From contig OZ004610.1 in the NCBI GenBank assembly GCA_963924565.1, positions 11,532,001 to 11,596,000 of the forward strand: 64,000 bases of DNA, written 5' to 3'. This DNA comes from Ascidiella aspersa (taxonomy: Eukaryota). Below are positions 27,578 to 48,100 of this stretch, piece after piece. The notes below the pieces were generated by a model, which saw only the letters and a program-made list of their open reading frames with translations, ran no database searches and had not been told where the DNA came from. Each line of letters starts with the position of its first letter. The stretch's first letter is position 1. A program made the translations under genes and the position numbers.

Positions 27578-28778
27578 TAGTTTTACCAAATCGGTTATGT
27601 GTCGTTATTTATTTTATAGAAAAAAAAACGTCCAAAACTTTTTTGCAGGGTTTCTAATCGTAGATTTTTTACGGGCAACCTTAGCCTCGATACCTAGCGC
27701 CTACCTGCCTCCTGACATTTTTTGAAAGCAAGAAGGTTACAAATAAATAATTTTATTCTGTTATGTGCAATCAAGAAGCATAATTCCGTAATAAATATTT
27801 GACACATGTTTTTGCGTCCTAGTCAATGAGGTTGTCCCAGTAATAAGCATAACGTCTATTCAGGACTTGTATATATCGGGGCGTGCTGTAAGATTTTAAA
27901 GTACATGAACCAGTCGATACACCTATAGATAAAAATGATTGATCGTTTGCCACCCTGCGCAAACCATGCTGGCGTGCACTAGTGACGTGACTGCCGGGGC
28001 TCGGGAGTAGCTGCTTGTGGGACGTAGCAGGATGTTATTTCACAGCAGTTCCGATCGCCGTCTCTCTGCTTGGCGGACAAACAACAACGTTGAGCCCTTG
28101 GCCTAGCAAAAGCAACAAAACTATACCCGCGTCGCTTTCCATGCATCCGCCTTCACTTTTCCGAGTGCACTTGCCACTTCCCGACTAGTTTTCCGGGGAC
28201 TCACGTTCCATCATAGGATCGGTCGACACACCCCACCCCATATCTATGTGCTTCTGTGCATTTTACCCATCAAATGCTCAATCAATTGCCAATTTTTTAC
28301 GCCATGCAAAAAAAAATCAAGTGGATTTATGACCACGTTAGGTTTTGAAGGCCATGAAACCATCCCGTTAAGTTTGTCACGCAAAAAAGTAAACATGCAA
28401 TGTTTTAAAAATTGTATCACAAATCAGTATGGTTGAGGGAAAACCAAAAGGAAAATCCTGCCCTGGCTGTCTAAACTTACAAAGCAACTCGCACGTGATA
28501 GGTCCGCAACATGTGTCTCAGTTGTTTTAATTTTTAATATACTCTCTGCTCACGAAATGCAGACTCAGCAAACACAGAACAGACATATTAGCAAAGTTAT
28601 CTGTCAAACAAACAGCCCCAGCGAGTGATGTGATGGCGTCGGCGTTGTGTTCATTGCATCATACATTTTACACGCACCTGTGCTTGAGCGTTGGTGACAT
28701 CCGAGTATCTTTTGGTCAAGTGCCCTGCCGGAGGAAGCCGCAACACTTTGCACATCCTAAACTTCCTCTGTGAAGGTC

Positions 28779-28816
28779 CATAAATTGAGCGTCCTCACGC
28801 CGTTTCAAATCAGATC
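28779..28816 (+). promoter_or_regulatory. Candidate TATA-like box (CATAAAT) and initiator of the secreted-protein gene
   Basis: CATAAAT at 28779 and TCAGATC ~31 nt downstream, ~55 nt before the ATG; same arrangement in copy 2. Confidence 0.4.
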
Positions 28817-28867
28817 ATCTTGTTGTATTAATCAATAGGAAGATCAGACAACGAACGAACAAGGAAG

Positions 28868-31800
28868 ATGAAGATTCTGCTGCTCCTTCTCGCATATGTT
28901 GCGGTAAGAAATAAAATTATATTATTGCGCTTTGACGTTTTTCGCTATTGCCTGTTGAAGGTCGCCGGCTGCACGGTGGTGAGTTTACACATAAACCCTA
29001 AAATTTTGGTAACCTATACAAGAAGAGTGGCTTGAATATAAACACATGATTTGTTTGTTTTGTTTTGTTATATTGTGGGAAATATTACAAAATATGCTTT
29101 TCTCTTTTACGATTTGCAGTTTGCGGCCTTGTCGGCTTCGAAATTGTTACTGCGCATACGTTAGTTGAACTCGGGAATCGATGTCTTAAGTTTTTTTGTT
29201 TTTGCACGAGCACAAATCAGATGAGACACTACTGCAACTTTGGTTTAAAACAAAAAAAGCTGTAAATCTTTTTTTCATTTTCAGGCGACGAACGCGTTCT
29301 ATTACCGTAGTTACTACTACACGTACGGCTACCGGTACCCGACCAGAAGCTACTACAGCTACAATATCTACTTTGTCAAATCCTGGTGCACAGTCAGCTA
29401 CTACTCGCCCATTCTCAAGCTCTACCCTGGCGACGATTGCAAAACCGAGGGTTGGGTCGGTAAGTAATTGTCACAAACAAAATATCCAAGTGTTGCAAAA
29501 AATATAGCGTATCGGACACTCCCAGACTTGCAGTCGTATTGTTTTTAATTTAATTCAGTAATTTTGATCCCTGGGCATTTATATCACTCAAGGCCAACAG
29601 CTGCAGGTCGAGTGAGGTTATTGTCCCATCATATGTTAAATCTTCCTATTTTTCTAAGCGACCAAAAACGATCATTTCTTAATCATTAGGAATAGAAAAA
29701 TGTAGAATATTCTAAAACGTCCTTCGCTTTAACCTTGCAAAGCCTAAAGATAAATGTATCGCGCTTACCAAGCGGTGATTCCATCAATTGCATCTATTTT
29801 TTAAGCTAAAATAGGCTATTTTTTCACAAATGGGAGAATTTCGCACTTTAAACTTACTTTTCAGAAAAAGATGTCCCGGACGTTAAACTGGAAATGGAAA
29901 ATCTGCTCAAAGAAAAACTTCTCGAAATCACCACCCAGATGACAAATAGGCGGGATACCGCTGTCGGTTATGTCGAATCGATCCACACGCAGTACAAGGC
30001 CTTGTATAAGAGCCGCATGACCACGTACTACCAGTATCTTATCGAGTGAGTGGCAAAAAAACTTTGTATCCTTGCAGGCAGTGTATATTAATGAATTTCT
30101 ATTCACTTTTTATGCCAACTCAGCCCATAACTTAGTGCAGCCCAGCCCAGTCCTGCTATATGACGCCTGGCTTGTTTATGTTTGCTTCGAGAAATTACTT
30201 AGGGTCGACATGTTAATGTGAGGTAAAATTTGTCACATTCAGGCTGCAACACTTATTGATCTCTCCAAAACATATATTGTAACAGTTACCAATCTCTTAA
30301 AATTACGGAAAGCTGTTTAGTTAAAAAACTTCTTACTGTATTATATTTAAAATAAAAAACAAAATCGTTAGTTGCATGTTCGCTTGTTTGTTATGACTTT
30401 CAGCTGCAATGTTAAGCTCGCCCAACCTACAGAACACAAACGTATTTATGGTCTTCCTTTATTTTACGAAGCCGCGCTACAACGGAAACGGAAAAGACAG
30501 AAATTGCGGCAAAGAGGGACCTAGAAATTAAACAATACGACGATAAACTGGATGCCACCAAAACCCGATTTGAGGCCAACTACAATTTAAGAATTGAGTC
30601 GAAGCTCAACTTAGTCAAGGCTTTCCACGCCCAACTCTTGGGAAAGTAAGTAAAATCAAAAAGAGTGGTGCCCATCAAACGTTGTTTATCGCCTTCTGAA
30701 AAGCACCATAGGTTGTGAGCAGTGGTGGGATTCAGCCGGTTCACATCGGTTCTATAGGACCGCCTCGCGAAATTTTATGAGATCAGCAAACCGGTTAGTT
30801 AGCATGACTGGTTACTGTCAATAGAATTTTGCATCTTATCTGATACACCGATTTTTTATATCCAAATAGCTCATGTGTTCTTTTTTCTTAAAATGTGCAA
30901 TGGTCAAGTTTAAACGTAACAGACATCCATTGTGTTAATTTTATAATTGTAGTAATTTTACTTTTGTGATTTTTTTTATCTGAAAATTAAACTGTTGCGT
31001 CTTAAGTACAAATAGTCATGGGAAGAACGATGGAACATGGAGTAACATTCTGTTCGTGCATCTACTTTTATTATTTGCGCGTTTTAACGTAACCACGATT
31101 TGCTCGTGTAACAGGGCCGAGCAATGTCTCATTTCGAGGAAGGCCAACATCGAAAAGTTTAAGCTGCAGCTGGACGCCTCGCTCAAGGCGTACGTCGACA
31201 GATACACCGCTCTCCACGCCGCTCGCGTTGCCAAGAAGGTGGCCTACTACAAGGCACTTCTTATCCGTGTCCACGGTAAGTACGGTCCTCTTTGCTGGGA
31301 AGGTAAATCGTTTCCGACCAGTCCTAACACTAAATTGTCTCAGGTGAATTAAAACCGTTCAATGTTATTTAAATAGTGGTTAATTTAACTTAACAATCGG
31401 TAACTAATATTTTGAATAATAATTTATTCTAATATTAATTTTACTAATTATATGCCTTATTTTTTTACAAGAATTTAGGATTTCTGTTTACGTTCTTCAT
31501 ATAGATGTTGAAAATGAATAGAGATATTTGAAAACTTTAAAAATGATACCTACTTCCGTATGGGCTTTGATATTCTTATTACGTCCTTGATATTGTTTTG
31601 TTGTTGATATATCTATATATATCCGTAAAAAACATTTAATCCGGAAACAGTGGCAAAAAGCCTTAACCCGGTTTATAAACTGTTAAGTTAACACTTTTGC
31701 ATTGGTCATTGAATTGCAACTATTTCAAATCAATAGGTGACGAAGAATGGAAGAAAACAGAAACCCAGGCACTTGTGGACGCCTACAGCACTGCCGAGCT

Positions 31801-34101
31801 TGCAAAAAGCGAGGGCACCGACGGTTACCTGAAGAAAATAGAAGAGTACAAAGAAAAGCTGATCCAACGCTACTGCTGCGCTAGCCGCTGTGGTCTTTGC
31901 AACGGGTGCTACTACTACTACAAGAAGTATTATACCAGCTACAGGTAATTGGAAAACGACCTCTTTATTTGGAAAACCATCTGGTAATTTGGAAAACTAA
32001 CTCTCTTGTTTGACAAGAATTGGTAATTGCCCTAACCTGACACAAAACGACGAAATTACTGAAGTTGCATTAATCCTCAACGTTTTAATGCTATGCTTTT
32101 CTTTTTAGTTACAGTCTCGGGAGTTGGTGGATATACAGACCGGTCACCAGTTACAGTACCTCCTGCTATTATAACTTCAAAGAAACTGCCCTTCCCCAAT
32201 GGCGCACAGTCAAATACTCGGATTTGGTTACCTGTGATGTCGGTAAGGGTCTAACAAAACGTCATAATCTTATAGTTATTTTTTAGATGTGATTTTTAAA
32301 TCGGTCTCTTTTCATTCTCGTTAATGTCAAATAAACACAAAAGTGCAGTTAGAAAAAACATGCAAATAAACCGCACGTTTTTAAGTATTCGGTCGAAATT
32401 AGCCAATGCCTGCCTGAAAACAATAATAATTTGGACTTAAATTTTCGTATGGTGTCTAACTTTTCTCCTTTATTTTCAGACGCCGTCAATGTACCAGAGG
32501 CCGACGCCGGCAATGAATTCACCAAAGCTTGTGACAAGGCTGTTGAAGATACAAGGGCGAGGTTTGCCACCTGGAAGGCTAAGTGGATGGACCATTGCAG
32601 CAGAATCGAGACCTACTACAAAACCCTTGTCGACTCAAGGCTTAACTGGGTTGTCAGATACTACACGCTTGTCTTTCAGGCCAGGTATTGACACCACTTT
32701 CATAAATGCATTTATAAACCGGCCAACTCGTATTCCGGTTGGTGCAATTTAAATTTGCCAATATTTCCAATAGTAGGATTTATGAACGATAAACTACAAC
32801 CACTCCCGAGGTACCATGGCGAAACAAATGTGCCATGCAAAATGTCGGCGAATTAACTTTTAAGATCCGTATGACAAAATGTGTGACTTGGGTAGTCAAG
32901 TCAGTAGTGAAACACTGGCATAACGACTGGGTGCTTGTTTAGTTCAAAAAAATTTATACACTTATATCCAAGTTAAAGCAAAAGTTATTATCATCGCGTG
33001 AAAATTCCCTGCTTTCTCTAGGAAGTTTCGCCGAGTGGTTTCTTCTCGAATTGGAACACTCTACGCAATACTAATTAATTTTTGCAGGAACAACAGCCTA
33101 ACCCTGAGCCCAGCGCAGGAGGCCTACATCGCATCGCTCAAATTACAAAATGAAGGCAGATGCATCGCTGCTTGTTCAACGTACAAGGCCAGTCTGGAGG
33201 CATCTTTGGCAACCGCCGAAGCTACTTTTGAAACCAATATCACTGCCTACAAAGAAAAGCTTGCAACCTTCCTGGATAGCTTTGTTGCTAAGTACAAGGA
33301 GTGTTTGGATGCTCGTACTAAAAAGATCGACGCATATAAGCTTGAGCTGGAGTCCGGTCAAGCCACTTTGAAAGCGACGCTGACTGCCCAACTCGAAGCA
33401 GTAAGAATAACTTTAGCATAAATACATAAGCATATAATAAACGGCTTAATAAACAGCATAATGTATAAGCATAATCAACAGAAAAAGACTTCGTAACTGT
33501 TTTTATTACTAAATAGTCTAGGTTCACGGTTTACTGGCGTGTTTGACTATTCGGTTCAAATTCACGCCGTCCTAAAAATGTGCGAACGGTCAAAGGACAC
33601 ACAAGATTGAAAAACTTAAGTTAAGCTAACCCTGTTGTTTTGCAGTACGTCACAGACAACAAGGCCGCCTATGAGAAAATGCTCAAGCACTTCCACGGCG
33701 AAGAGCTTCCCGCCGAAGCACAGACCATGCTGACTTGCTACGAGACGCTGCTGCAGGGAAAGAGCGACGAGGTTTCTACCGATTTCGACACTAACTACGC
33801 CGACATGATTCCCAAGCTCGTCATGCACATGGCTTGCACCGAAAAGTGCATTTCCCAGGCCGCCACTTCCTTCCCGGCCTACACGTTCAGCTACTATTAC
33901 TTCTGGCGTTACACCTATCCCACCTACACCAGATACACCTACTTGCTTGGCTTCTACCAGTAAGTTAAAATTTCAAATTATTTTGTATTTTGTTTTTAAT
34001 TACAAGTATAAATATTTAACTAATAATTTGTTTTCAGGCGATACCGCTACATCCGTGTCAGCTACCGATACAGCTCACGGCGATACGTTTTGCTGTACTA
34101 G
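28868..34101 (+). CDS. Secreted Tyr-rich two-repeat helical protein, copy 1, 654 aa; join(28868..28903,29285..29459,29865..30045,30472..30645,31115..31275,31737..31944,32109..32242,32480..32684,33088..33400,33646..33959,34038..34101). Possibly related to ascidian endostyle-specific Ends proteins (unverified)
   Basis: All 10 introns are GT-AG with consistent phases (1965 nt). Signal peptide MKILLLLLAYVAATNA; mature N-terminus FYYRSYYYTYGYRY...; C-terminus ...RYRYIRVSYRYSSRRYVLLY*; AATAAA at 34187. Confidence 0.88.
30720..31030. mobile_element. MITE-like remnant in intron 4 of the secreted-protein gene (longer in copy 2, ~39637..40005)
   Basis: Starts CAGTGGTGGGATTCAGCCGGTTC; copy 2 keeps a second GATTCAGCCGGTTC near 39981 that copy 1 lacks. 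Confidence 0.45.
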
Positions 34102-34186
34102 ACGTACAGCATTCGCCAAATCACCGGCCATCCAAACAAGGCACTCTCTGTTCCAATGTTTTGTAGTTTTTAGTTGTAGCGTCGCC

Positions 34187-34192
34187 AATAAA
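34187..34192 (+). terminator. Polyadenylation signal of secreted-protein copy 1
   Basis: AATAAA 86 nt after the stop; equivalent at 43159 in copy 2. Confidence 0.65.
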
Positions 34193-35841
34193 AGGCCGTG
34201 TGAAATACCAAGTTGTTATTTTTGCTTCTAAGTTTATCTGAGTATTTTAGCCAATTAAAGACCAAAAAGGTTACATGATGTAAAATGACTGATTAAGTTT
34301 CACAGAGAATAATGTAATATAGATTACCATAGATTTTTTTATGTAAAAATCAAGACTCGTTGTTATCAAAAACTATTAAACCAATTTGTTTATTGCCATA
34401 CAGACGATTATTGATTAAATTGAGAATTTAAATATATCACAGCATTTTAATAGTTTTTTTTCGTTAAATTATACAAAAAATAATCGACGTAAGTAATAAT
34501 GGTCCAACCCACTGATCTGGTCCAACCCTAGCAACTAAAAATATTCTTTGTTAAGGCTGGTTCGCACTAGATGCGTCTAGCGTTAACGTAAAACGTTTTT
34601 AAAAAAGCTTTCGGTTGTGGGAAAGTTGAACTATTTCAACTTTTACACTTTCGGTTACAAGCGAGGAAATTTGCCGTTAACGCTGGCAACGCGTTATGTG
34701 TGAACTGACTCTACGTCTACGAAAACCAATCACCTGTATCTCGTCGTTACTCATTGAAGTAATGATGCATAAATAATAATACTTGGATTTGATATGCCAA
34801 ATGAAAAATGATAACTATTTGTTCATATGTACTCTAATTTTTCAAAATCTGATAACCAATCAAATTAACTTTGAAACACAGAATTCTATGAAACGCGCGA
34901 ACGTTTAAAATTGTTCATGCGAAACTGGTCACGTGGTTAACAGTTGCAAAATGTAAACAGAGTTCAGTACGGTTTCATCCGTTTACAAAGTTTATACCGC
35001 TTTTAGCTGAAAGGGTTGCGCAAATATTCATTTAATTAAAGTGATATTATGTGAACTTTTTTAAGCGCTTATAAACTAAACACTTGGTTACAACCTTGTC
35101 ATCGAAATATAATATCTAAACTGGGTTTCAATCCTTGTAAGTGTAGCTTAAGGCTCGACAAACATTTAATGTAATATAAAGGTCATACTAAACTTGAATT
35201 TTCAGTTTCTATTCTTTTCATTGAATAGCCTCCTGTAACGCTTGATTCTGTTAGTTAAGATGCAAGGGATATATGGTTTCCAGGTTAGAACGGCCTGCAC
35301 TAGGGGATTTGTACTCGGCCGCGGTCATAGCCGGGCATTTCATGTAAAATCAACGTATAATGCGGTCAGCCGCGAAAAATAGCTCAAACGTGCAAAACTT
35401 TTGTCACACCAACAGTTTTGAAACTGGTATTGTGTGACCCAGGTTGGAAAGTTAAGCCCACACAGTTGCACTCTTCGCCACGGTCTTAGCTGCGCATTTT
35501 GTGTAAAATTGCCGTAAAATGCCATCTGCAAAGAAACATCACTCAAATGCGCAAAAATTTTGTTGCTTCTGGTTTCTCTATAGTATGTCATTTTCAGCCA
35601 TGCAAGTTTTAGAAATAATGTTATTCCAGCTACCCAAATTTAAGCAGAAATTTTATTCCAGCCAAACATATTTAATAAACGCATTGTCCGCGTAATATTT
35701 TAAGTTTCAAATCCGGAGTGTGACCTGGCATTACAAGTTCAACAAGATGTACTAATTTTTTTCTTATCTATCCTTTTTTTATGTCAATAGGAATATAAGG
35801 CAAATGTATTGTGTGGACATCTGCTAACATAGGTCCAAAAT

Positions 35842-36585
35842 ATGGAGGTTTCACCTGAGGCTCAAGGTGTTGATCTTTTGTTTAAAAAGTTAGGTAAGTG
35901 TGTACCGTACCCTGTTTGTACCACCTGAATTTATGAAACACAATTAAAACCACCAGTAACGTGGAAGCTGTACAGTGAAACTTTAGAAGTGTTTAAAAAG
36001 TAATTTAAGGTATTGATTGTGTTCTACCATAGATCAGATTTTGTTAAAATAACCTTATGCATCTTACTGATATAAAAGTAACCTGCTCATTTGGAAAGTA
36101 TGGCAGATCTCAACAAGATTGTGTGGGTGTACGGCTAAAAAAATCTTTCGACAGGGTACACCAATGGTCAAAAGTGCATCCCGCTTATGTACCTATAGTA
36201 AACCAGGGTGCATATTTTTTTATTTTTTGGGGTGCAGTTTGGGTCAGTTAAAAAACTTGTGAGTGTATTTGCCATACTTTCCACCATGGGAGAATCCTCA
36301 CATTTTAATAGTAAGTGGTAAATACTTTCTTTATACAAGGCACAGTGGATATTTAATTGTTTAATTTTTAAGTAGTATATGTACTGTATCTTTGCAGGAC
36401 ATAACATTGCTGAAATTCGAACTCGGGCATTAGAAAGCATTTGGTCCAAACTGGAACATGGCTTGATTCATGATGCTGACTTAGTTCAAGAAAAACAGCT
36501 TATGATTCGGCTTCTGGAGTGGTTTAACTTCAATCCATCACCAAAGCAAGACCTGGTGTTACAACTTCTTGCTAGGCTGGTTAAA
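35842..36585 (+). pseudogene. RTTN: Truncated duplicate of rotatin coding exons 1-2; join(35842..35893,36398..36585)
   Basis: Encodes [62 protein letters not shown]...LLARLVK, the same protein as at 45182..45925; the duplication junction lies ~45 nt into intron 2. Confidence 0.85.
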
Positions 36586-37791
36586 GTAAATGATACTTCA
36601 ATAAAATAAAACTCTGCATTAGTTTTGGGAACTCTGTATTATTTTGTTTTTTATTTTAACTCTGTATTAGTTTTTTTTTATTTTGTTATGTGCAATCAAG
36701 AAGCATAATTCCGTAATAAATATTTGACACATGTTTTTGCGTCCTAGTCAATGAGGTTGTCCCAGTAATAAGCATAACGTCTATTTAGGACTTGTATATA
36801 TCGGGGCGTGCTGAAAGATTTTAAAGTACATGAACCAGTCGATACACCTATAGATAAAAATGATTGATCGTTTGCCACCCTGCGCAAACCATGCTGGCGT
36901 GCACTAGTGACGTGACTGCCGGGGCTCGGGAGTAGCTGCTTGTGGGACGTAGCAGGATGTTATTTCACAGCAGTTCCGATCGCCGTCTCTCTGCTTGGTG
37001 GACAAACAACCACGTTGAGCCCTTGGCATCGCAAAAGCAACAAAACTATACCCGCGTCGCTTTCCATGCATCCGCCTTCACTTTTCCGAGTGCACTTGCC
37101 ACTTCCCGACTAGTTTTGCGGGAACTCACGTTCCATCATAGGATCGGTCGACACACCCCACCCCATACCTATGAGCTTCTGTGCATTTTACCCATCAAAT
37201 GCTCAATGAGTTGCAAATTTTTTACGCCATGCAAAAAAAAATCAAGTGGATTTATGACCACGTTTGGTTTTGAAGGCCATGAAACCATCCCGTTAAGTTT
37301 GTCACGCAAGAAAGTAAACATGCAATGTTTTAAAAATTGTATCACAAATCAGTATGGTTGAGGGAAAACCAAAAGGAAAATCCTGCCCTGGCTGCCTAAA
37401 CTTACAAAGCAACTCGCACGTGATAGGTCCGCAACATGTATCTCAGTTGTTTTAATTTTTAATATACTCTCTGCTCACGAAATGCAGACTCAGCAAACAC
37501 AGAACAGACATATTAGAAAAGTTATCTGTCAAACAAACAGCCCCAGCGAGTGATGTGATGGCGTCGGCGTTGTGTTCATTGCATCATACATTTACACGCA
37601 CCTGTGCTTGAGCGTTGGTGACATCCGGGTATCTTTTGGTCAAGTGCCCTGCCGGAGGAAGCCGCAACACTTTGCACATCCTAAACTTCCTCTGTGAAGG
37701 TCCATAAATTGAGCGTCCTCACGCCGTTTCAAATCAGATCATCTTGTTGTATTAATCAATAGGAAGATCAGACAACGAACGAACAAGGAAG

Positions 37792-40700
37792 ATGAAGATT
37801 CTGCTGCTCCTTCTCGCATATGTTGCGGTAAGAAATAAAATTATATTATTACGCTTTGACGTTTTTCGCTATTGCCTGTTGAAGGTCGCCGGCTGCACGG
37901 TGGTGAGTTTACACATAAACCCTAAAATTTTGGTAACCTATACAAGAAGAGTGGCTTGAATAAAACACATGATTTGTTTGTTTTTGTTTTGTTATATTGT
38001 GGGAAATATTACAAAATATGCTTTTCTCTTTTACGATTTGCAGTTTGCGGCCTTGTCGGCTTCGAAATTGTTACTGCGTATGCGTTAGTTGAACTCGGGA
38101 ATCGATGTCTTAAGTTTTTTTGTTTTTGCACGAGCACAAATCAGATGAGACACTACTGCAACTTTTGCTTAAAACAAAAAAAGCTGTAAATCTTTTTTTC
38201 ATTTTCAGGCGACGAACGCGTTCTATTACCGTAGTTACTACTACACGTACGGCTACCGGTACCCGACCAGAAGCTACTACAGCTACAATATCTACTTTGT
38301 CAAATCCTGGTGCACAGTCAGCTACTACTCGCCCATTCTCAAGCTCTACCCTGGCGACGATTGCAAAACCGAGGGTTGGGTCGGTAAGTAATTGTCACAA
38401 ACAAAATATCCAAGTGTTGCAAAAAAATATAGCGTATCGGACACTCCCAGACTTGCAGTCGTATTGTTTTTCATTTAATTCAGTAATTTTGATCCCTGGG
38501 CATTTATATCACTCAAGGCCAACAGCTGCAGGTCGAGTGAGGTTATTATCCCGTCATATGTTAAATCTTCCTATTTTTCTAAGCGACCAAAAACGATCAT
38601 TTCTTAATCATTAGGAATAGAAAAATGTAGAATATTCTAAAACGCTTTAACCTTCCAAAGCCTAAAGATAAATGTATCACGTTTACCAAGCGGTGATTCC
38701 GTTAATTGCATCTATTTTTCAAGCTAAAATAGGCTATTTTCTCACAAATGGGAGAATTTCGCATTTTCAAATTACTTTTCAGAAAAAGATGTCCCAGACG
38801 TCAAACTGGAAATGGAAAATCTGCTCAAAGAAAAACTTCTCGAAATCACCACCCAGATGACAAATAGGCGGGATACCGCTGTCGGTTATGTCGAATCGAT
38901 CCACACGCAGTACAAGGCCTTGTATAAGAGCCGCATGACCACGTACTACCAGTACCTTATCGAGTGAGTGGCAAAAAAACTTTGTATCCTTGCAGGCAGT
39001 GTATATTAATGAATTTCTATTCACTTTTTATGCCAACTCAGCCCATAACTTAGTGCAGCCCAGCCCAGTCCTGCTATATGACGCCTGGCTTGTTTATGTT
39101 TGCTTCGAGAAATTACTTAGCGTCGACATGTTAATGTGAGGTAAAATTTGTCACATTCAGGCTGCAACACTTATTGATCTCTCCAAAACATAGATTGTAA
39201 CAGTTACAATCTCTTAAAATTACGGAAAGCTGTTTAGTTAAAAAACTTCTCACTGTATTATATTTAAAATAAAAAACAAAATCGTTAGTTGCATGTTCGC
39301 TTGGTTGTTATGACTTTCAGCTGCAATGTTAAGCTCGTCCAACCTACAGAACACAAACGAATTTATGGTCTGCCTTTATTTTACGAAGCCGCGCTACAAC
39401 GGAAACGGAAAAGACAGAAATTGCGGCAAAGAGGGACCTAGAAATCAAACAATACGACGATAAACTGGATGCCACCAAAACCCGATTCGAGACCAACTAC
39501 AATTTGAGAATTGAGTCGAAGCTCAACTTAGTCAAGGCTTTCCACGCCCAGCTCTTGGGAAAGTAAGTAAAATCAAAAAGAGTGGTGCCCATCAAACGTT
39601 GTTTATCGCCTTCTGAAAAGCACCATAGGTTGTGAGCAGTGGTGGGATTCAGCCGGTTCACATCGGTTCTATAGGACCGCCTCGCGAAATTTTATGAGAT
39701 CAGCAAACCGGTTAGTTAGCATGACTGGTTACTGTCAATAGAATTTTGCATCTTATCTGATACACCGATTTTTTATATCTAAATAGCTCATGTGTTCTTT
39801 TTTCTTAAAATGTACAATGGTCAAGTTTAAACGTAACAGACATCCATTGTGTTAATTTCATAATTGTAGTAATTTTTCTTTTGTGATTTTTTTTATCTGA
39901 AAATTAAACTGTTGCGTCTTAAGTACAAATAGTCATGGGAAGACGACTGCTGCTTTTAGTGTGAATGTTCGCAGTGATGTGATTCAGCCGGTTCGCACCA
40001 AACGATGGAACATGGAGTAACATTCTGTTTGTGCATCTACTTTTATTATTTGCGCGTTTTAACGTAACCACGATTTGCTCGTGTAACAGGGCCGAGCAAT
40101 GTCTCATTTCGAGGAAGGCCAACATCGAAAAGTTTAAGCTGCAGCTGGACGCCTCGCTCAAGGCGTACGTCGACAGATACACCGCTCTCCACGCCGCTCG
40201 CGTTGCCAAGAAGGTGGCCTACTACAAGGCACTTCTTATCCGTGTCCACGGTAAGTACGGTCCTCTTTGCTGGGAAGGTAAATCGTTTCCGACCAGTCCT
40301 AACACTAAATTGTCTTAGGTGAATTAAAACCGTTCAATGTTATTTAAATAGTGGTTAATTTAACTTAACAATCGGTAACTAATCTTTTAAATAATAATTG
40401 ATTCTAATATTAATTTTACTAATTATATGCCTTATTTTTTACAAGAATTTAGGATTTCTGTTTACGTTCTTCATATAGATGTTGAAAATGAATAGAGATA
40501 TTTGAAAACTTTAAAAATGATACCTACTTCCGTATGGGCTTTGATATTCTTATTACGTCCTTGATATTATTTTGTTGTTGATATATCTGTATATATCCGT
40601 AAAAAACATTTAATCCGGAAACAGTGGCAAAAAGCCTTAACCCGGTTTATAAACTGTTAAGTTAACACTTTTGCATTGGTCATTGAATTGCAGCTATTTC

Positions 40701-43073
40701 AAATCAATAGGTGACGAAGAATGGAAGAAAACAGAAACCCAGGCACTTGTGGACGCCTACAGCACTGCCGAGCTTGCAAAAAGCGAGGGCACCGACGGTT
40801 ACCTGAAGAAAATAGAAGAGTACAAAGAAAAGCTGATCCAACGCTACTGCTGCGCTAGCCGCTGTGGTCTTTGCAACGGGTGCTACTACTACTACAAGAA
40901 GTATTATACCAGCTACAGGTAATTGGAAAACGACCTCTTTATTTGGAAAACCATCTGGTAATTTGGAAAACTTACTCTCTTGTTTGACAAGAATTGGTAA
41001 TTGCCCTAACCTGACACAAATAGACGAAATTACTGAAGTTGCATTAATCCTCAACTTTTTAATGCTATGCTTTTCTTTTTAGTTACAGTCTCGGGAGTTG
41101 GTGGATATACAGACCGGTCACCAGTTACAGTACCTCCTGCTATTATAACTTCAAAGAAACTGCCCTTCCCCAATGGCGCACAGTCAAATACTCGGATTTG
41201 GTTACCTGTGATGTCGGTAAGGGTCTAACAAAACGTCATAATCTTATAGTTATTTTTTAGATGTGATTTTTAAATCGGTCTCTTTTCATTCTCGTTAATG
41301 TCAAATAAACACAAAAGTGCAGTTAGAAAAACATGCAAATAAACCGCACGTTTTTAAGTATTCGGTCGAAATTAGCCAATGCCTGCCTGAAAACAATAAT
41401 AATTTGGACTTAAATTTTCGTATGGTGTCTAACTTTTCTCCTTTATTTTCAGACGCCGTCAATGTACCAGCGGCCGACGCCGGCAATGAATTCACCAAAG
41501 CTTGTGACAAGGCTGTTGAAGATACAAGGGCGAGGTTTGCCACCTGGAAGGCTAAGTGGATGGACCATTGCAGCAGAATCGAGACCTACTACAAAACCCT
41601 TGTCGACTCAAGGCTTAACTGGGTTGTCAGATACTACACGCTTGTCTTTCAGGCCAGGTATTGACACCACTTTCATAAATGCATTTATCAACCGGCCAAC
41701 TCGTATTCCGGTTGGTGCAATTTAAATTTGCCAATATTTCCAATAGTAGGATTTATGAACGATAAATTACAACCACTCCCGAGGTACCATGGCGAAACAA
41801 ATGTGCCATGCAAAATGTCGGCGAATTAACTTTTAAGATCCGTATGACAAAACGTGTGACTTGGGTAGTCAAGTCAGTAGTGAAACACTGGCATAAAGAC
41901 TGGGTGCTTGTTTAGTTCAAAAAAATTATACACTTATATCCAAGTTAAAGCAAAAGTTATTATCATCGCGTGAAAATTCCCTGCTTTCTCTCGGAAGTTT
42001 CGCCGAGTGGTTTCTTCTCGAATTGGAACACTCTACCCAATACTAATTAATTTTTGCAGGAACAACAGCCTAACCCTGAGCCCAGCGCAGGAGGCCTACA
42101 TCGCATCGCTCAAATTACAAAATGAAGGCAGATGCATCGCTGCTTGTTCAACGTACAAGGCCAGTCTGGAGGCATCTTTGGCAACCGCCGAAGCTACTTT
42201 TGAAACCAATATCACTGCCTACAAAGAAAAGCTTGCAACCTTCCTGGATAGCTTTGTTGCTAAGTACAAGGAGTGTTTGGATGCTCGTACTAAAAAGATC
42301 GACGCATATAAGCTTGAGCTGGAGTCCGGTCAAGCCACTTTGAAAGCGACGCTGACTGCCCAACTCGAAGCAGTAAGAATAACTTTAGCATAAATACATA
42401 AGCATATAATAAACGGCTTAATAAACAGCATAATGTATAAGCATAATCAACAGAAAAAGACTTCGTAACTGTTTTTATTACTAAATAGTCTAGGTTCACG
42501 GTTTACTGGCGTGTTTGACTATTCGGTTCAAATTCACGCCGTCCTAAAAATGTGCGAACGGTCAAAGGACACACAAGATTGAAAAACTTAAGTTAAGCTA
42601 ACCATGTTGTTTTGCAGTACGTCACAGACAACAAGGCCGCCTATGAGAAAATGCTCAAGCACTTCCACGGCGAAGAGCTTCCCGCCGAAGCACAGACCAT
42701 GCTGACTTGCTACGAGACGCTGCTGCAGGGAAAGAGCGACGAGGTTTCTACCGATTTCGACACTAACTACGCCGACATGATTCCCAAGCTCGTCATGCAC
42801 ATGGCTTGCACCGAAAAGTGCATTTCCCAGGCCGCCACTTCCTTCCCGGCCTACACGTTCAGCTACTATTACTTCTGGCGTTACACCTATCCCACCTACA
42901 CCAGATACACCTACTTGCTTGGCTTCTACCAGTAAGTTAAAATTTCAAATTATTTTGTATTTTGTTTTTAATTACAAGTATTAATATTTAACTAATGATT
43001 TGTTTTCAGGCGATACCGCTACATCCGTGTCAGCTACCGATACAGCTCACGGCGATACGTTTTGCTGTACTAG
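37792..43073 (+). CDS. Secreted Tyr-rich two-repeat helical protein, copy 2, 654 aa; join(37792..37827,38209..38383,38783..38963,39389..39562,40090..40250,40711..40918,41083..41216,41453..41657,42060..42372,42618..42931,43010..43073)
   Basis: Same exon lengths and splice sites as copy 1 with an intact frame; by eye, two amino-acid differences (exon 4 A>T, exon 8 E>A). Confidence 0.88.
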
Positions 43074-44460
43074 ACGTACAGCATTCGCCAAATCACCGGC
43101 CATCCAAACAAGGCACTCTCTGTGCCAATGTTTTGTAGTTTTTAGTTGTAGCGTCGCCAATAAAAGGCTGTGTGAAATTCCAAGTTGTTATTTTTGCTTC
43201 TAAGTTTATCTGAGTATTTTAGCCAATTAAAGACCAAAAAGGTTACATGATGTAAAATGACTGATTAAGTTTCACAGAGAATAATGTAATATAGATTACC
43301 ATAGAATTTTTTATGTAAAAATCAAGACTCGTTGTTATCAAAAACTATTAAACCAATTTGTTTATTGCCATACAGACGATTATTGATTAAATTGAGAATT
43401 TAAATATATCACAGCATTTTAATAGTTTTTTTTTTCGTTAAATTATACAAAAAATAATCGACGTAAGTAATACGGTGGGTGAAACTTTATTCACGGCCTT
43501 ACCTCTTTGTGTATTACCGCGACAATACGATGAAATACGATTTGGAGAATATTGGAAACATCGTATTTGGAGAATATTTGCTATTTGCACCTGTTCTGTA
43601 TGTTACTCCAATCCAACATATCTACACACAATTATAAGTTGTGTATAATAATATAATAACTTATGGCTTTGAAGCGAAGGGGGTTCAAATATGGCGTAGA
43701 TTTTGGCAAATGATCGAAACATACATTTGATCAATCAAAATTTACGTAGATAATGCTTACGGCCATGTTATTACATTTTGGTCAGCTAGCATGTTTAAAA
43801 AGTCAATATTTTCATTCTCTCTAAATGATTTAACGTCTATGGTTTGCTATACTTTTTCCAACTTTTACTGTGTAAATTTTTACCATGCCTTGGTCTGAGC
43901 AATCACTGTTGAAACAGAGTTTAAATCTGTAGTTTTGAGCAATATGCAAACACGTTTATGTGCCTAATAAGCCACGTTTTATATTGAAAGTTTTGCCAAT
44001 TTAAATCCAATAAACGCAAGATTTATAAATAATAATACTTGAATTTGATATGCCAAATGAAAAATGATAACTATTTGTTCATATGTACTCTAATTTTTCA
44101 AAATCTGATAACCAATCAAATGAACTTTGAAACACGGAATTCTATGAAACGCGCGAACGTTTAAAATTGTTCATGCGAAACTGGTCACGTGGTTAACAGT
44201 TGCAAAATGTAAACAGAGTTCAGTACGGTTTCATCCGTTTACAAAGTTTATACCGCTTTTAGCTGAAAGGGTTGCGCAAATATTCATTTAATTAAAGTGA
44301 TATTATGTGAACTTTTTTAAGCGCTTATAAACTAAACACTTGGTTACAACCTTGTCATCGAAAAATAATATCTAAACTGGGTTTCAATCCTTGTAAGTGT
44401 AGCTTAAGGCTCGACAAACATTTAATGTAATATAAAGGTCATACTAAACTTGAATTTTCA

Positions 44461-44595
44461 GTTTCTATTCTTTTCATTGAATAGCCTCCTGTAACGCTTG
44501 ATTCTGTTTCTATTCTTTTCATTGAATAGCCTTCTGTAACGCTTGATTCTGTTTCTATTCTTTTCATTGAATAGCCTCCTGTAACGCTTGATTCT
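44461..44595. repeat. 45-bp tandem repeat x3 (single unit in duplication copy 1)
   Basis: GTTTCTATTCTTTTCATTGAATAGCC(T/C)...GTAACGCTTGATTCT three times; once near 35205. Confidence 0.9.
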
Positions 44596-45181
44596 GTTAG
44601 TTAAGATGCAAGGGATATATGGTTTCCAGGTTAGAACGGCCTGCAGTGCACTAGGGGATTTGTACTCGGCCGCGGTCATAGCCGGGCATTTCATGTAAAA
44701 TCAACGTAAAATGCGGTCAGCCGCGAAAAATAGCTCAAACGTGCAAAACTTTTGTCACACTAACAGTTTTGAAACTGGTATTGTGTGACCCAGGTTGGAA
44801 AGTTTAACCCACACAGTTGCACTCTTCGCCACGGTCTTAGCTGCGCATTTTGTGTAAAATTGCCGTAAAATGCCATCTGCAAAGAAACATCAAAATTTTG
44901 TTGCTTCTGGTTTTCTCTATAGTATGTTATTTTCAGCCATGCAAGTTTTAGAAATAACGTTATTCCAGCTACCCAAATTTAAGCAGAAATTTTATTCCAG
45001 CCAAACATATTTAATAAATGCATTGTCTGCATAATATTTTAAGTTTCAAATCCGGAGTGTGACCTGGCATTTCAACTTCAACAAGATGTACTAATTTTTT
45101 TCTTATCTATCCCTCTTTTTATGTCAATAGGAATATAAGGCAAATGTATTGTGTGGACATCTGCTAACATAGGTCCAAAAT

Positions 45182-48100
45182 ATGGAGGTTTCACCTGAGG
45201 CTCAAGGTGTTGATCTTTTGTTTAAAAAGTTAGGTAAGTGTGTACCGTACCCTGTTTGTACCACCTGAATTTATGAAACACAATTAAAACACCAGTAACG
45301 TGGAAGCTGTACAGTGAATCTTTAGAAGTGTTTAAAAAGTAATTTAAGGTATTGATCGTGTTCTACCATAGATCAGATTTTGTTAAAATAAACCTCTGCA
45401 TCTTACTGATATAAAAGTAACCTGCTCATTTGGAAAGTATGGCAGATCTCAACAAGATTGTGTGGGTGTACAGCTGAAGAAATCTGTTCGACAGGGTACA
45501 CCAATGGTCAAAAGTGTTTCCCGCTTATGTACCTATAGTAAACCAGGGTGCATATTTTTTTTATTTTTTGGGGTGAAGTTTGGGTCAGTTAAAAAACTTG
45601 TGAGTGTATTTGCCATACTTTCCACCATGGGAGAATCCTCACATTTTAATAGTAAGTGGTAAAAGCTTCCTTTATACAAGGCACAGTGATATTTAATTGT
45701 TTAATTTTTAAGTAGTATATGTACTGTATCTTCGCAGGACATAACATTGCTGAAATTCGAACTCGGGCATTAGAAAGCATTTGGTCCAAACTGGAACATG
45801 GCTTGATTCATGATGCTGACTTAGTTCAAGAAAAACAGCTTATGATTCGGCTTCTGGAGTGGTTTAACTTCAATCCATCACCAAAGCAAGACCTGGTGTT
45901 ACAACTTCTTGCTAGGCTGGTTAAAGTAAATGATACTTCAATAAAATAAAACTCCGTATTAGTTTTGGGCAAAAAAATTATCCAGAGCATAAAAAATTCA
46001 TGCCTGAAGGAAAGTATTGTCAAATATAGATAGAACTTGTAGTCTTAAATTGCCAAATTCTATTTCACTGTGATTCCTGTGTGATTTTAAAACATTGGTT
46101 ATTTGTATGTAAGTCGGTCCCGCAATTCCCGCTTCTCTGGTCTAATGTACACTTTTGATAATGTGTATAACAATTTAGATCTGTTTGCAAAAAAAGGTAT
46201 TTAAAAAAATTGCTTAAATGCTTATTAACAGGCTGAGAGAATCTTGCCAGCTTTCTGGTGACAAGCGTTTTTGGCCTACATTTTTTTTTTTAATGTTTCA
46301 ACCTTTCCATGTTTAGGCAATGAACAAGGCTATTACGAATTAAATTAGTTAAAAAAGTGTAAAATTTATTGTGGCATAAACAAATACATATAAAAGGGGC
46401 ATCCTAAAGTAGAACTTTAAAAATTAAATTTTTTTTTTCACCAATTTCTTCGGTTTTCTGGCTCATTCTTCGGCTGACATAGTCGCCAAGCCGCCAGCAT
46501 TCTGCCATACTGCTTATTAACATAAATCATGTCATTATTCTGTTCTTATATGCAGCATTCTTCAGCTTGTGATTTGCTGGTTTCTGTTGGGGCTGTCACA
46601 TTTCTGTCTCAGTTAAGAACAGATGCAGACTCGGACTTCAGACCACAAATCGATGTTATTATAGACAAGCTCCTTCACGTTACTGACCGTGACTTGCTTC
46701 AGGCTCGAACTTTGCCTCGTCGCTGTGTGTATGGAAAATCTAATTATGAAACTGGTAAATGTTTAGTTTCATCAATTAGAAAAAAAATGCTTCAACTGAA
46801 CTTGCTTTAGTTTTAATTTTATAAAGATCGTATGTGTTATTTGTTTTAAATATTTACAATAACTTTACCAACTTCAAAGGCAGAAACTATAGTTTGCTGC
46901 TAATTACCCTAAGTTGGTTTGATTAATAGCACTTCACTGAACTATTATATTGCTTTCCCGAATTATTTCTGAAAAAAATAAAATATGGCCTTATTTAACT
47001 AAATGTGCATTGATGTATACATAATTTGTTTTTTCTAGCAAATGAAAAGTCAATTAAAATTGTGGAGCAACCGACTTATGGATACTTTACATCAGCAGCA
47101 GAAAATGACATGGATGAAACAGTATGTACAAACAGTATATATAGCATTTTAAATAGTTTAAACAGCTATGTATACACTATGCACGGATCTGTAATGTAGC
47201 GTGATAATGATTTGCAAAGCCAAAAAGATCGAGTAGATTGGCAGCATCTTGATTAAGACTGTGAAGCAAACTGAAGATGATACAATTTCATATCTACTCA
47301 ACCTTTTTAGCTTTGCAATTCAATATCAAAATTAACAGCTATAAATTTGTACTATATTGTCCAGCAATTTCATTTTCAAAATTTTAAACAGGCATCAACA
47401 ATGACACCACCTTTTCCCAAAACCCCTGACACTCGCATCAATTTACCAACCACCAGCGATCCAGACTGCATGCGTTTTGCTGGCTTCCCCTGGCACTCAC
47501 TTACCGGCACAGATCGGCATGTTTTGGCTTCAACCGGTGCCTCGCTTTGTTCTCCCAGTACTCATCTCGTCAGAAATGCTTGTGCTTTTCTGCTGGATGT
47601 GATTTTTCGTGACTTCCCCCCGGAAATATTTCTACAAAGACCGAGCATTGTTCAGGTGACGTCATATATGATAAAATAAGCATATGTTATAGGTAAATTT
47701 AGTCGACGTCCTGGCATTCCAATGTCTACTTGGCCCCATCAAGCCTGTTGACTCCAGTGTTACCCTGGCAACACACATTTGCAATCATGATAAGTGTAAT
47801 TTGGTAAAAGATAAGAAACTCATATTGTTTACAATTTTATTACATTATATATACTAAAGTAACTTTTGGGTAAAATTATTTACTTACTATTAAAGAGACT
47901 GTTTATTATATTCCCACTTCTAATGTAGCATTGTCCATTTGACTGTTTTAATACAATTGTGAAGCTACATATTAATAAAATACTATATAATATCATGTCA
48001 AATACCCTATTCAGAGTATAAGTTTGTCTGTACATTTTTCCTTTGCTTGCAGACTTTACTAACTTTGATAAGTTCAAGACCTGGCGGTCAGCTCATGACT

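What the first reader, a model, noticed from the sequence alone, without database searches (positions are those of the whole stretch)
28868..34101. Secreted 654-aa protein: helical rods with cationic Tyr-rich blocks; candidate mucus-net, adhesive or iodination substrate
Seen: the ORF track splits this gene into unrelated-looking fragments, but 11 exons splice cleanly. The protein has a signal peptide, an N-terminal Tyr block (12 Tyr in the first 26 mature residues), a long helical region, a central CCASRCGLCNGCYYYYKKYYTSYSYSLGSWWIY block, a second helical region, and a Tyr/Arg/Ser tail. The Tyr blocks lack acidic residues. Knowledge: Tyr- and Arg/Lys-rich segments are the substrates for DOPA or dityrosine crosslinking and wet adhesion in marine biomaterials; tunicate endostyles secrete the feeding net and bind iodine without a recognised thyroglobulin orthologue. 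From memory, ascidian endostyle proteins CiEnds1/CiEnds2/HrEnds2 are secreted and have two tandem repeats. Inference: a rod with sticky ends and middle that could polymerise into a mesh and/or act as a Tyr-dense iodine or DOPA acceptor.
Basis: partly seen in the sequence, partly recalled or inferred. Interest (0 to 1): 0.85.

Follow-up and report, generated by a model that had tools for sequence, protein, structure and literature searches.

The report
Divergent sea-squirt endostyle-type secreted rod protein
This is a real, intact gene, present as two tandem copies, for a secreted, tyrosine-rich protein built from two helical rods. It is a divergent member of a sea-squirt-only family whose Ciona member is databased as "endostyle-specific", so it is a new member of a known but functionally unstudied family.

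Summary
Eleven GT-AG exons at 28868-34101 (+) give a 654-aa open frame. It has a signal peptide, 74 Tyr (11.3%), three basic Tyr blocks almost free of acidic residues, and two long helical regions. A second intact copy lies at 37792-43073. Exons differ 0.46% between the copies and introns 1.54%, with pN/pS about 0.08, so both copies are under constraint.

The two halves of the protein are an old internal duplication (z = 10 against shuffles). The protein aligns end to end with Ciona proteins: 34% identity, E 1e-118. These include the "endostyle-specific precursor" O44237/BAA24830 (E 5e-92).

The family is found only in tunicates: 26 hits among 1.84 billion representatives. This genome has at least 38 loci, and our gene is a long-branch member with no 1:1 orthologue. 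It has the most Tyr and the fewest Cys in its tail.

AlphaFold models of Ciona relatives give, per half, a small aromatic cap plus a rod of about 16 nm. No known fold or Pfam family matches.

The proposed mucus-net, adhesive and iodination roles remain inference.

The scan had already met this family on other DNA of this genome (s1-788660, s1-802190).

The parts
28780..28785 (+). TATA-like element (ATAAAT) 88 nt upstream of the ATG; possible core promoter
   Evidence: position only, not tested
28868..28903 (+). exon 1: start codon and most of the signal peptide (aa 1-12)
   Evidence: the family-wide N-terminus starts MK and continues with a hydrophobic stretch
29285..29459 (+). exon 2: end of the signal peptide plus the N-terminal Tyr block / aromatic cap 1 (aa 13-71; 15 Tyr, conserved W46-C47, YPG, C64)
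   Evidence: beta-hairpin plus short helices in the homologue model
29865..30045 (+). exon 3: helix 1 of rod 1 (aa 71-131)
30472..30645 (+). exon 4: first half of the 107-residue helix 2 of rod 1 (aa 131-189)
31115..31275 (+). exon 5: second half of helix 2, with family-invariant C193 (aa 189-243)
31737..31944 (+). exon 6: helix 3 of rod 1, conserved CxxxC (C290, C294), start of the central Tyr block (aa 243-312)
32109..32242 (+). exon 7: rest of the central Tyr/Trp block / aromatic cap 2 (aa 312-357); parallel to exon 2, same donor phase
32480..32684 (+). exon 8: helix 1 of rod 2 (aa 357-425)
33088..33400 (+). exon 9: most of the 113-residue helix 2 of rod 2, invariant C497, two N-glycosylation sequons (aa 425-529); weak ApoA-I-like composition
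33646..33959 (+). exon 10: end of helix 2, helix 3 of rod 2, CxxxC (C593, C597), C-terminal Tyr block (aa 530-634); the most conserved exon of the family
34038..34101 (+). exon 11: Arg/Tyr tail (aa 634-654) and TAG stop
34187..34192 (+). AATAAA polyadenylation signal 86 nt after the stop
   Evidence: the same signal follows copy 2 at 43159
37792..43073 (+). copy 2 of the gene: 11 intact exons, 9 nt differences in the CDS (7 synonymous; A166T, E363A)
27751..45969 (+). tandem duplication of a unit of about 9 kb (27751-36629 and 36676-45969): 98-99% identical over the gene, 92.5% over the 3' flank

Best explanation
The locus holds two functional tandem copies of a divergent member of the tunicate-only 'Ends2-type' endostyle secretory protein family. 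The type member is Ciona intestinalis 'endostyle-specific precursor' O44237 / GenBank AB010896.

The product is a basic secreted protein of about 75 kDa with five parts in series: an aromatic cap, rod 1, a second aromatic cap, rod 2 and a basic Tyr/Arg tail. Each cap is Tyr/Trp/Cys-rich and contains a beta-hairpin. Each rod is an antiparallel helical rod of about 16 nm made of three helices. The first and third helices together are as long as the second.

Most likely it is made by gland cells of the endostyle and released into the pharyngeal feeding mucus. There the rigid rods would act as spacers. The cationic aromatic modules would be the contact points, binding other copies and acidic mucus glycans. 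They could be fixed by disulfides and possibly by peroxidase-made tyrosine links.

Shown here: gene structure, selection on both copies, internal duplication, family membership, and tunicate restriction. Predicted on relatives only: the rod fold. Inferred: tissue of expression, role in the net, and cross-linking chemistry.
For: - Gene model: 11 GT-AG exons, 654 aa.
- Both copies intact; exon divergence 0.46% against intron 1.54%, Fisher p = 2e-4; pN/pS 0.078.
- Internal duplication: the halves align end to end at E 2e-16; rods alone give z = 10.3 against shuffles.
- Full-length similarity, from local blastp of the joined model against proteins already fetched: C. savignyi H2YRI4 34%, E 1e-118; C. 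intestinalis LOC100186110 33%; O44237 'endostyle-specific precursor' 31.6%, E 5e-92; Clavelina 28%; Styela 26%.
- All six family-invariant Cys are present.
- An exon-10 profile finds only 26 proteins in 1.84 billion. The full-length ones that carry a name are all ascidian. Of the unnamed ones looked up, most sit on JGI/IMG contigs of about 2 kb that hold little more than the coding sequence.
- At least 38 loci lie in tandem arrays in this genome, as expected for a bulk secretory product.
- AF2 of H2YRI4: pLDDT 80, helices 59+107+47 and 68+113+43 residues. AF2 of a Ciona half-length protein: pLDDT 77, beta-hairpin cap. The helices map without gaps onto our exons.
- O44237 is tied to AB010896 by published primers (PMC7347631).
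Against:
- The gene sits on a long branch (1.37 substitutions per site) with no orthologue in Ciona, Clavelina or Styela, so its tissue or role may have shifted.
- 'Endostyle-specific' is a database name for one Ciona paralogue. The original in situ papers are not in the library, so zone data rest on my memory.
- No paper I could reach identifies any family member in the mucus net.
- The fold was predicted on homologues of 33-34% identity, not on our protein.
- The self-association job gave no verdict.
Confidence: 0.5

Rival explanations
1. This is a neofunctionalised paralogue used outside the endostyle: a Tyr-rich, Cys-poor structural or adhesive protein of the tunic, stolon, papillae or egg coat. 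It would be hardened by DOPA or dityrosine chemistry instead of disulfides.
For: Long isolated branch with no orthologue. It has the most Tyr in the N and C blocks (15 and 16) and only 1 Cys in the C block, against 2-8 in the relatives compared. It also has an extra Arg/Tyr tail. The locus lies apart from the big family arrays.
Against: The whole architecture and all six invariant Cys are retained. Tyr-rich blocks are general in the ascidian members, at 8-12% Tyr. No evidence points to any other tissue.
Confidence: 0.2
2. Its main role is as an iodine acceptor: a non-homologous functional analogue of thyroglobulin. It would be iodinated as the secretion passes the peroxidase-positive zone of the endostyle.
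For: 74 Tyr, many in exposed low-confidence segments. The family link to an endostyle-specific gene. Iodotyrosines and thyroxine are reported from Ciona endostyle extracts, and iodine is concentrated in zone 7 (as cited in PMC9953650).
Against: There are no thyroglobulin domains (Pfam blank). Iodine binding and TPO map to zones 7-8, while secretory cells are in zones 2, 4 and 6 (PMC9953650, PMC10980280). The unnamed relatives on metatranscriptome-type contigs are Tyr-poor (3-6%), so Tyr density is not a family-wide requirement.
Confidence: 0.08
3. It is a lipid- or particle-binding amphipathic-helix protein that works like exchangeable apolipoproteins or phasins, coating hydrophobic food particles or droplets.
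For: Exon 9 gives weak ApoA-I matches (PDB 6clz_B E 2e-4; Pfam PF01442 E 0.007). The hydrophobic period is about 3.65-3.7 residues in most helices. A phasin appears among the structural neighbours at Z 9.5.
Against: The Pfam score of 16.6 bits is far below the 90-bit cut-off. The matches cover one exon only. Z values under 13 are uninformative for helical bundles. The conserved Cys framework and aromatic caps have no apolipoprotein counterpart.
Confidence: 0.05
4. It is not a working gene: a decaying duplicate, or one gene whose two haplotypes were assembled in tandem.
For: The copies are 98-99% identical over the gene. No transcript evidence could be obtained.
Against: Both frames and all 20 splice sites per copy are intact. 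pN/pS is 0.078, and exons are three times better conserved than introns. The 3' flank of the unit is only 92.5% identical, which fits a true older duplication with gene conversion over the gene better than it fits two alleles. Even if it is a haplotype artefact, one functional gene remains.
Confidence: 0.04

Closest known systems
Ciona intestinalis 'endostyle-specific precursor' (O44237 / NP_001107601 / BAA24830; GenBank AB010896, probably CiEnds2 of Ogasawara and Satoh 1998; from memory also Halocynthia HrEnds2)
   Same: Same length class (650 against 654 aa). Same signal peptide and same two-half architecture. All six invariant Cys are shared. 31.6% identity over 598 aa, E 5e-92.
   Different: Ours has 18 Cys against 33, more Tyr in the terminal blocks, and an extra Arg/Tyr tail. 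It sits on its own long branch, outside the clade of O44237. Its expression is unknown. HrEnds2 itself could not be retrieved.
Ciona savignyi H2YRI4 / C. intestinalis LOC100186110 (uncharacterised)
   Same: Best full-length matches: 33-34% identity, E 1e-110 to 1e-118, with a nearly gapless alignment.
   Different: They are not orthologues in the tree. They group with Clavelina proteins and with the C7 array of this genome.
Exchangeable apolipoproteins (ApoA-I/A-IV/E, PF01442)
   Same: Long amphipathic helices; weak sequence matches in exon 9.
   Different: The match is below the Pfam threshold. There are no proline-punctuated 22-mers. Ours has a Cys framework and aromatic caps. It is not a member.
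Tyr/Lys/Arg-rich marine adhesive and hardened proteins (mussel foot proteins, ascidian DOPA proteins such as ferreascidin; from memory)
   Same: Cationic, Tyr-dense segments free of acidic residues in a secreted protein.
   Different: There is no sequence relationship. Here the Tyr blocks are short modules flanking large folded helical rods, and any modification is untested.
Thyroglobulin
   Same: Both are large secreted proteins linked to the thyroid or the endostyle, the thyroid-homologous organ; iodination is possible in principle.
   Different: No Tg type-1 or cholinesterase-like domains. The fold is unrelated.
Long antiparallel helical bundles (I-BAR/IMD, spectrin repeats, trypanosome three-helix receptors)
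   Same: Elongated helical hairpin or three-helix geometry; these are the top weak Foldseek rows.
   Different: Foldseek E >= 1.3 and VIA Z <= 9.9, below the level that is meaningful for helical proteins. This is a common arrangement only.

Membership tests
Tunicate Ends2-type endostyle secretory protein family (type: Ciona O44237/AB010896) | Significant full-length sequence similarity to the type member | tested here: met
   31.6% identity over 598 aa, E 5e-92. 33-34% identity to other Ciona members, E down to 1e-118.
Tunicate Ends2-type endostyle secretory protein family (type: Ciona O44237/AB010896) | N-terminal secretory signal peptide | tested here: met
   By inspection only, since no SignalP was available. 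MK, then a hydrophobic stretch, then small residues at -3/-1 before residue 17. This aligns with the family consensus N-terminus.
Tunicate Ends2-type endostyle secretory protein family (type: Ciona O44237/AB010896) | Two tandem homologous halves, each an aromatic/Cys module followed by three long helices | tested here: met
   The halves align at E 2e-16. Rods alone give z 10.3. The helices of the homologue model map gaplessly onto ours.
Tunicate Ends2-type endostyle secretory protein family (type: Ciona O44237/AB010896) | Invariant Cys framework: a mid-helix Cys and a CxxxC at the end of each rod | tested here: met
   C193, C290/C294, C497 and C593/C597 are present. Many non-invariant Cys are missing: 18 in ours against 22-36 in the public full-length proteins compared.
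Tunicate Ends2-type endostyle secretory protein family (type: Ciona O44237/AB010896) | Endostyle-specific expression | not testable with these tools
No transcript-derived fragment was found.
Apolipoprotein A1/A4/E (PF01442) | Score above the Pfam gathering threshold | tested here: not met
   16.6 bits against a 90-bit cut-off, in exon 9 only.
Thyroglobulin | Thyroglobulin type-1 repeats and a cholinesterase-like domain | tested here: not met
   No Pfam family on any exon at E <= 10, apart from weak helical matches.
Heptad coiled-coil fibrous proteins (intermediate filaments, coiled-coil silks) | Filament or silk family domain; 3.5-residue heptad periodicity | tested here: not met
   No Pfam hit. 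The hydrophobic period is 3.65-3.8 in five of six helices, though the signal is weak.
DOPA / dityrosine-hardened adhesive proteins | Post-translational modification of Tyr | not testable with these tools
   Only the composition is known: cationic Tyr blocks.

The most novel reading that the evidence does not exclude
The Ends2-type family is the so far unidentified protein scaffold of the tunicate mucous feeding net. This Tyr-richest, Cys-poorest member would be the net component that is cross-linked, and iodinated, through tyrosine as the secretion slides over the peroxidase-positive zone of the endostyle. That would make it a non-homologous functional forerunner of thyroglobulin.
Probability: 0.08. 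Interest if true: 0.85.

Novelty: new member of a known kind. Interest (0 to 1): 0.4.

Why it matters
In the literature I could reach, neither the protein make-up of the ascidian feeding net nor the identity of the endostyle's iodine-accepting protein is resolved. This family is abundant in copy number, restricted to tunicates and secreted. It now has a concrete structural picture: two 16-nm rods joined by aromatic/Cys modules.

That gives specific peptides to look for in mucus-net proteomics, including iodo-, DOPA- and dityrosine forms, and specific genes to knock out in Ciona. For this particular gene the added value is modest. It shows how far the family can drift towards a Tyr-based, Cys-poor version while keeping its frame.

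Tried and rejected
- **Database searches.**
  - The protein-atlas search on exon 10 gave no usable hit.
  - Pfam on all ten coding exons of 20 aa or more (exons 2-11) gave nothing above threshold.
  - The search for homologous proteins with exon 10 found no candidate (only proteins of 57-182 aa were visible).
  - The search for homologous proteins with Styela P0006, run to find HrEnds2, found only itself.
- **Fold searches.** Foldseek against PDB gave nothing at E < 1. VIA-align wide gave Z <= 9.9, only generic helical hairpins.
- **Self-association.** Complex prediction on residues 27-300 of P0008, two copies, gave no verdict. This is not evidence either way.
- **Literature.** The two original Ends papers are not held. 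Searches for Ends names and accessions gave only PMC7347631. Supplements of the Ciona and Styela endostyle transcriptome papers and of the Ciona gut-membrane proteome did not list the family under the identifiers I had.
- **The joined protein.** The joined 654-aa protein has no reference. It was assembled only inside local scripts, for translation, composition and pairwise comparison with sequences already fetched. It was not sent to any database search, structure prediction, complex prediction or exact look-up. Those joined steps were left out, and homologues or single exons were used instead.
- **Rejected readings.** Membership of apolipoproteins, thyroglobulin or intermediate filaments (see membership test), and a pseudogene reading (pN/pS 0.078).
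Full report
**Observation**

I rebuilt the gene from the raw sequence by extending the reading frame across candidate GT/AG sites. It has eleven exons on the + strand: 28868-28903, 29285-29459, 29865-30045, 30472-30645, 31115-31275, 31737-31944, 32109-32242, 32480-32684, 33088-33400, 33646-33959 and 34038-34101. All introns are GT-AG, and the 1965-nt CDS gives 654 aa.

Where alternative acceptors kept the frame open, the chosen one gives the same segment length as the Ciona homologues. A TATA-like element lies 88 nt upstream of the ATG, and an AATAAA lies 86 nt after the stop.

The protein starts with a typical signal peptide, with cleavage predicted after residue 16 by inspection. It has 74 Tyr (11.3%) and 18 Cys. 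It carries three basic aromatic blocks almost free of acidic residues:
- aa 17-59: 15 Tyr, 0 D/E
- aa 293-345: 12 Tyr, 1 D/E
- aa 600-654: 16 Tyr, 0 D/E

There are 12 Tyr among the first 26 mature residues.

**Two copies under constraint**

The gene lies in a tandem duplication of about 9 kb (27751-36629 and 36676-45969). Copy 2 (37792-43073) has all exons and splice sites intact. It differs from copy 1 at 9 of 1965 coding positions, 7 synonymous and 2 not.

Introns differ at 1.54% plus 72 nt of indels, against 0.46% for exons (Fisher p = 2e-4). pN/pS is 0.078. The 3' flank of the unit is only 92.5% identical, while the gene body is 98-99%. This fits a real duplication homogenised over the gene better than it fits two alleles laid in tandem, although long reads are needed to settle it. 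Either way the coding sequence is under purifying selection.

**Internal duplication**

Residues 17-294 align end to end with residues 302-597 (22% identity, E 2e-16). With the Tyr blocks removed, rod 1 against rod 2 still scores 10.3 standard deviations above shuffles. Exons 2 and 7 are parallel, each an aromatic block with the same donor phase. This agrees with the scan's separate note s1-793449.

**Family**

No exon reaches any Pfam threshold. In the window's own genome (308.6 Mb, 75 contigs) exon 10 finds 38 loci and exon 9 finds 36, at 25-39% identity. Most lie in tandem arrays:
- 13 copies at 11.2-kb spacing on C3 at 7.47-7.61 Mb
- 6 more on C3 at 8.07-8.17 Mb
- 8 on C4 at 6.08-6.15 Mb
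- 8 on C7 at 25.10-25.16 Mb
- 1 on C1

A profile of exon-10 equivalents (A1) was searched with HMMER against 1.84 billion representative proteins. It found only 26 proteins. The named full-length ones are all ascidian (Ciona savignyi, Clavelina lepadiformis, Styela clava). Of the unnamed ones looked up, most sit on JGI/IMG contigs of about 2 kb that hold little more than the coding sequence. They are probably mRNAs of pelagic tunicates, which is inference.

A profile of full-length members added Ciona intestinalis proteins. One of them is named "endostyle-specific precursor" (O44237, NP_001107601, BAA24830).

Inside a local script, the joined model aligns over its whole length with these proteins:
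- H2YRI4: 34%, E 1e-118
- LOC100186110: 33%
- O44237: 31.6% over 598 aa, E 5e-92
- Clavelina: 28%
- Styela: 26%

All six Cys that are invariant in the 17-sequence family alignment are present in our protein. Family membership is therefore secure.

The primers that PMC7347631 lists for "ENDS sp1, AB010896.1" encode peptides found in O44237 at the right distance for the stated 132-bp amplicon. The primers for ENDS1 (AB010895.1) match none of the family proteins held. The Ciona relative is therefore the AB010896 gene. From memory this is CiEnds2 of Ogasawara and Satoh 1998, which resembles HrEnds2. I could not read those papers.

**Place in the family**

I built a maximum-likelihood tree from 13 public proteins, eight approximate paralogues of this genome (HSP chains) and our model. 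It is the quick tree, because the careful search did not finish. Our protein sits on a long branch (1.37) with no supported sister.

The other arrays of this genome group with the O44237 clade (C3, C1), with the LOC100186110/Clavelina clade (C7), or alone (C4 at 6.1 Mb). All those paralogues match Ciona proteins better than they match our gene. Our gene is thus an old, fast-evolving lineage without a 1:1 orthologue in the sampled species.

A block-by-block table shows what is special about it:
- It has the most Tyr in the N block (15, equalled only by Ciona LOC104266762) and in the C block (16, also equalled by it).
- It has a single Cys in the C block, against 2-8 in the other rows.
- It has 18 Cys in all, against 22-36 in the public full-length proteins.
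- It has a unique Arg/Tyr tail.

The unnamed relatives on metatranscriptome-type contigs go the other way, with 3-6% Tyr and up to 36 Cys.

**Structure**

The joined protein has no reference, so I folded relatives instead.

AlphaFold2 on C. savignyi H2YRI4 with a 17-sequence alignment gave mean pLDDT 79.8 and pTM 0.43. Each half has three long helices: 59, 107 and 47 residues, then 68, 113 and 43. Confidence is low only in the most Tyr-rich stretches.

A Ciona half-length protein gave pLDDT 76.7. It shows the conserved part of the N block as a beta-hairpin plus short helices ahead of the rod.

The helices map without gaps onto our sequence and follow the exons: helix 1 is exon 3, helix 2 is exons 4+5, helix 3 is exon 6, helix 4 is exon 8, and helices 5 and 6 are exons 9 and 10.

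In both halves the first and third helices add up to the length of the second. Structural neighbours align to separate two-helix hairpins. From this I infer that each half is an antiparallel rod of about 16 nm whose two ends of chain meet at mid-rod. The invariant mid-helix Cys, the CxxxC and the aromatic cap would come together there. This topology is inference, because the tools returned no coordinates.

Foldseek against PDB found nothing at E < 1. The wide VIA-align search gave Z <= 9.9, below what is meaningful for helical proteins. Exon 9 has weak ApoA-I-like matches, which I read as shared amphipathic-helix composition.

**How it most likely works**

Shown: it is a secreted, selected, two-rod member of a tunicate-only family that is heavily amplified in this genome and whose Ciona type member is databased as endostyle-specific.

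Inferred: it is made in the glandular zones of the endostyle. Zones 2, 4 and 6 are the secretory ones according to PMC9953650 and PMC10980280. It then enters the feeding mucus. There the rods would serve as rigid spacers. The cationic aromatic modules (pI 8.6-9.8, against 5.5 for rod 2) would bind each other and acidic glycans, with disulfides and possibly tyrosine cross-links fixing the contacts.

In this member the balance is shifted from Cys to Tyr. I put about 0.5 on this reading. Rivals are a role in another tissue, with DOPA- or dityrosine-hardened material (0.2); a primary role as iodine acceptor (0.08); an apolipoprotein-like binder (0.05); and a non-functional or artefactual copy (0.04).

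**What could not be done**

No expression evidence could be obtained. The self-association job gave no verdict. The joined protein was used only in local scripts against sequences already fetched. All remote searches used single exons by reference or public homologues.

**Comparison and novelty**

The gene is a new, divergent member of a known but functionally unstudied family. The functional proposals remain open.

The scan had already met this family elsewhere in this genome (s1-788660, s1-802190). My independent count of 38 loci and the Ciona link agree with that note.

Interest is moderate. The structural picture and the Cys-to-Tyr shift are new details. The family also offers a concrete handle on two old questions: what the mucus net is made of, and what is iodinated in the endostyle.

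Noticed in passing
window 27751-36629 versus 36676-45969: The tandem duplication is unevenly diverged. It is 98-99% identical over the gene and its 1.1-kb upstream region, but only 92.5% over the 1.9-kb 3' flank. Similarity breaks at 34498-34769 / 43472-44025. This suggests gene conversion over the gene body, or an older duplication.
   Followed up: partly
window 46529-46807 (+): An ORF matches the Rotatin N-terminal domain (PF14726, E 1.3e-5, just above the cut-off), so a rotatin gene starts just downstream of copy 2. The duplicated 3' flank after copy 1 (34769-36629) may carry a partial copy of its 5' region, as another note of the scan proposes.
   Followed up: partly
window 14398-14745 and 21182-21481 (+): These ORFs match Tmemb_cc2 (PF10267; E 5e-23 and 2.6e-5). 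They are exons of a TMCC-type transmembrane coiled-coil gene upstream of the finding.
   Followed up: no
G000:C3:7473469-7607039: An extremely regular array of 13 family copies at 11.2-kb spacing, with exon-10 translations near-identical to each other. Further arrays lie on C3 at 8.07-8.17 Mb, C4 at 6.08-6.15 Mb and C7 at 25.10-25.16 Mb. The C7 and C4 arrays contain copies on both strands.
   Followed up: partly
P0011, P0013, P0018, P0024/P0055 (JGI/IMG contigs of about 2 kb; one cluster member from MERC ERR1712038): Unnamed full-length relatives sit on contigs that hold little more than the coding sequence. They are Tyr-poor (3-6%) and Cys-rich (up to 36). Some have N-terminal Met/Gly/Lys/Ser repeats between the signal peptide and the first cap. 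They are probably from pelagic tunicates, and show that the rods and Cys frame are the conserved core while Tyr density is an ascidian feature.
   Followed up: partly
P0001 (Logan, 94 aa) versus L024:1913-2194: A protein called on a public Logan contig is 98% identical to exon 10 of a C7-array paralogue of this genome.
   Followed up: no
PMC7347631 primer table versus P0065 (O44237): The family member corresponds to GenBank AB010896 ('ENDS sp1' in that paper), not AB010895 ('ENDS1'). Naming of Ciona Ends genes is inconsistent across sources.
   Followed up: yes
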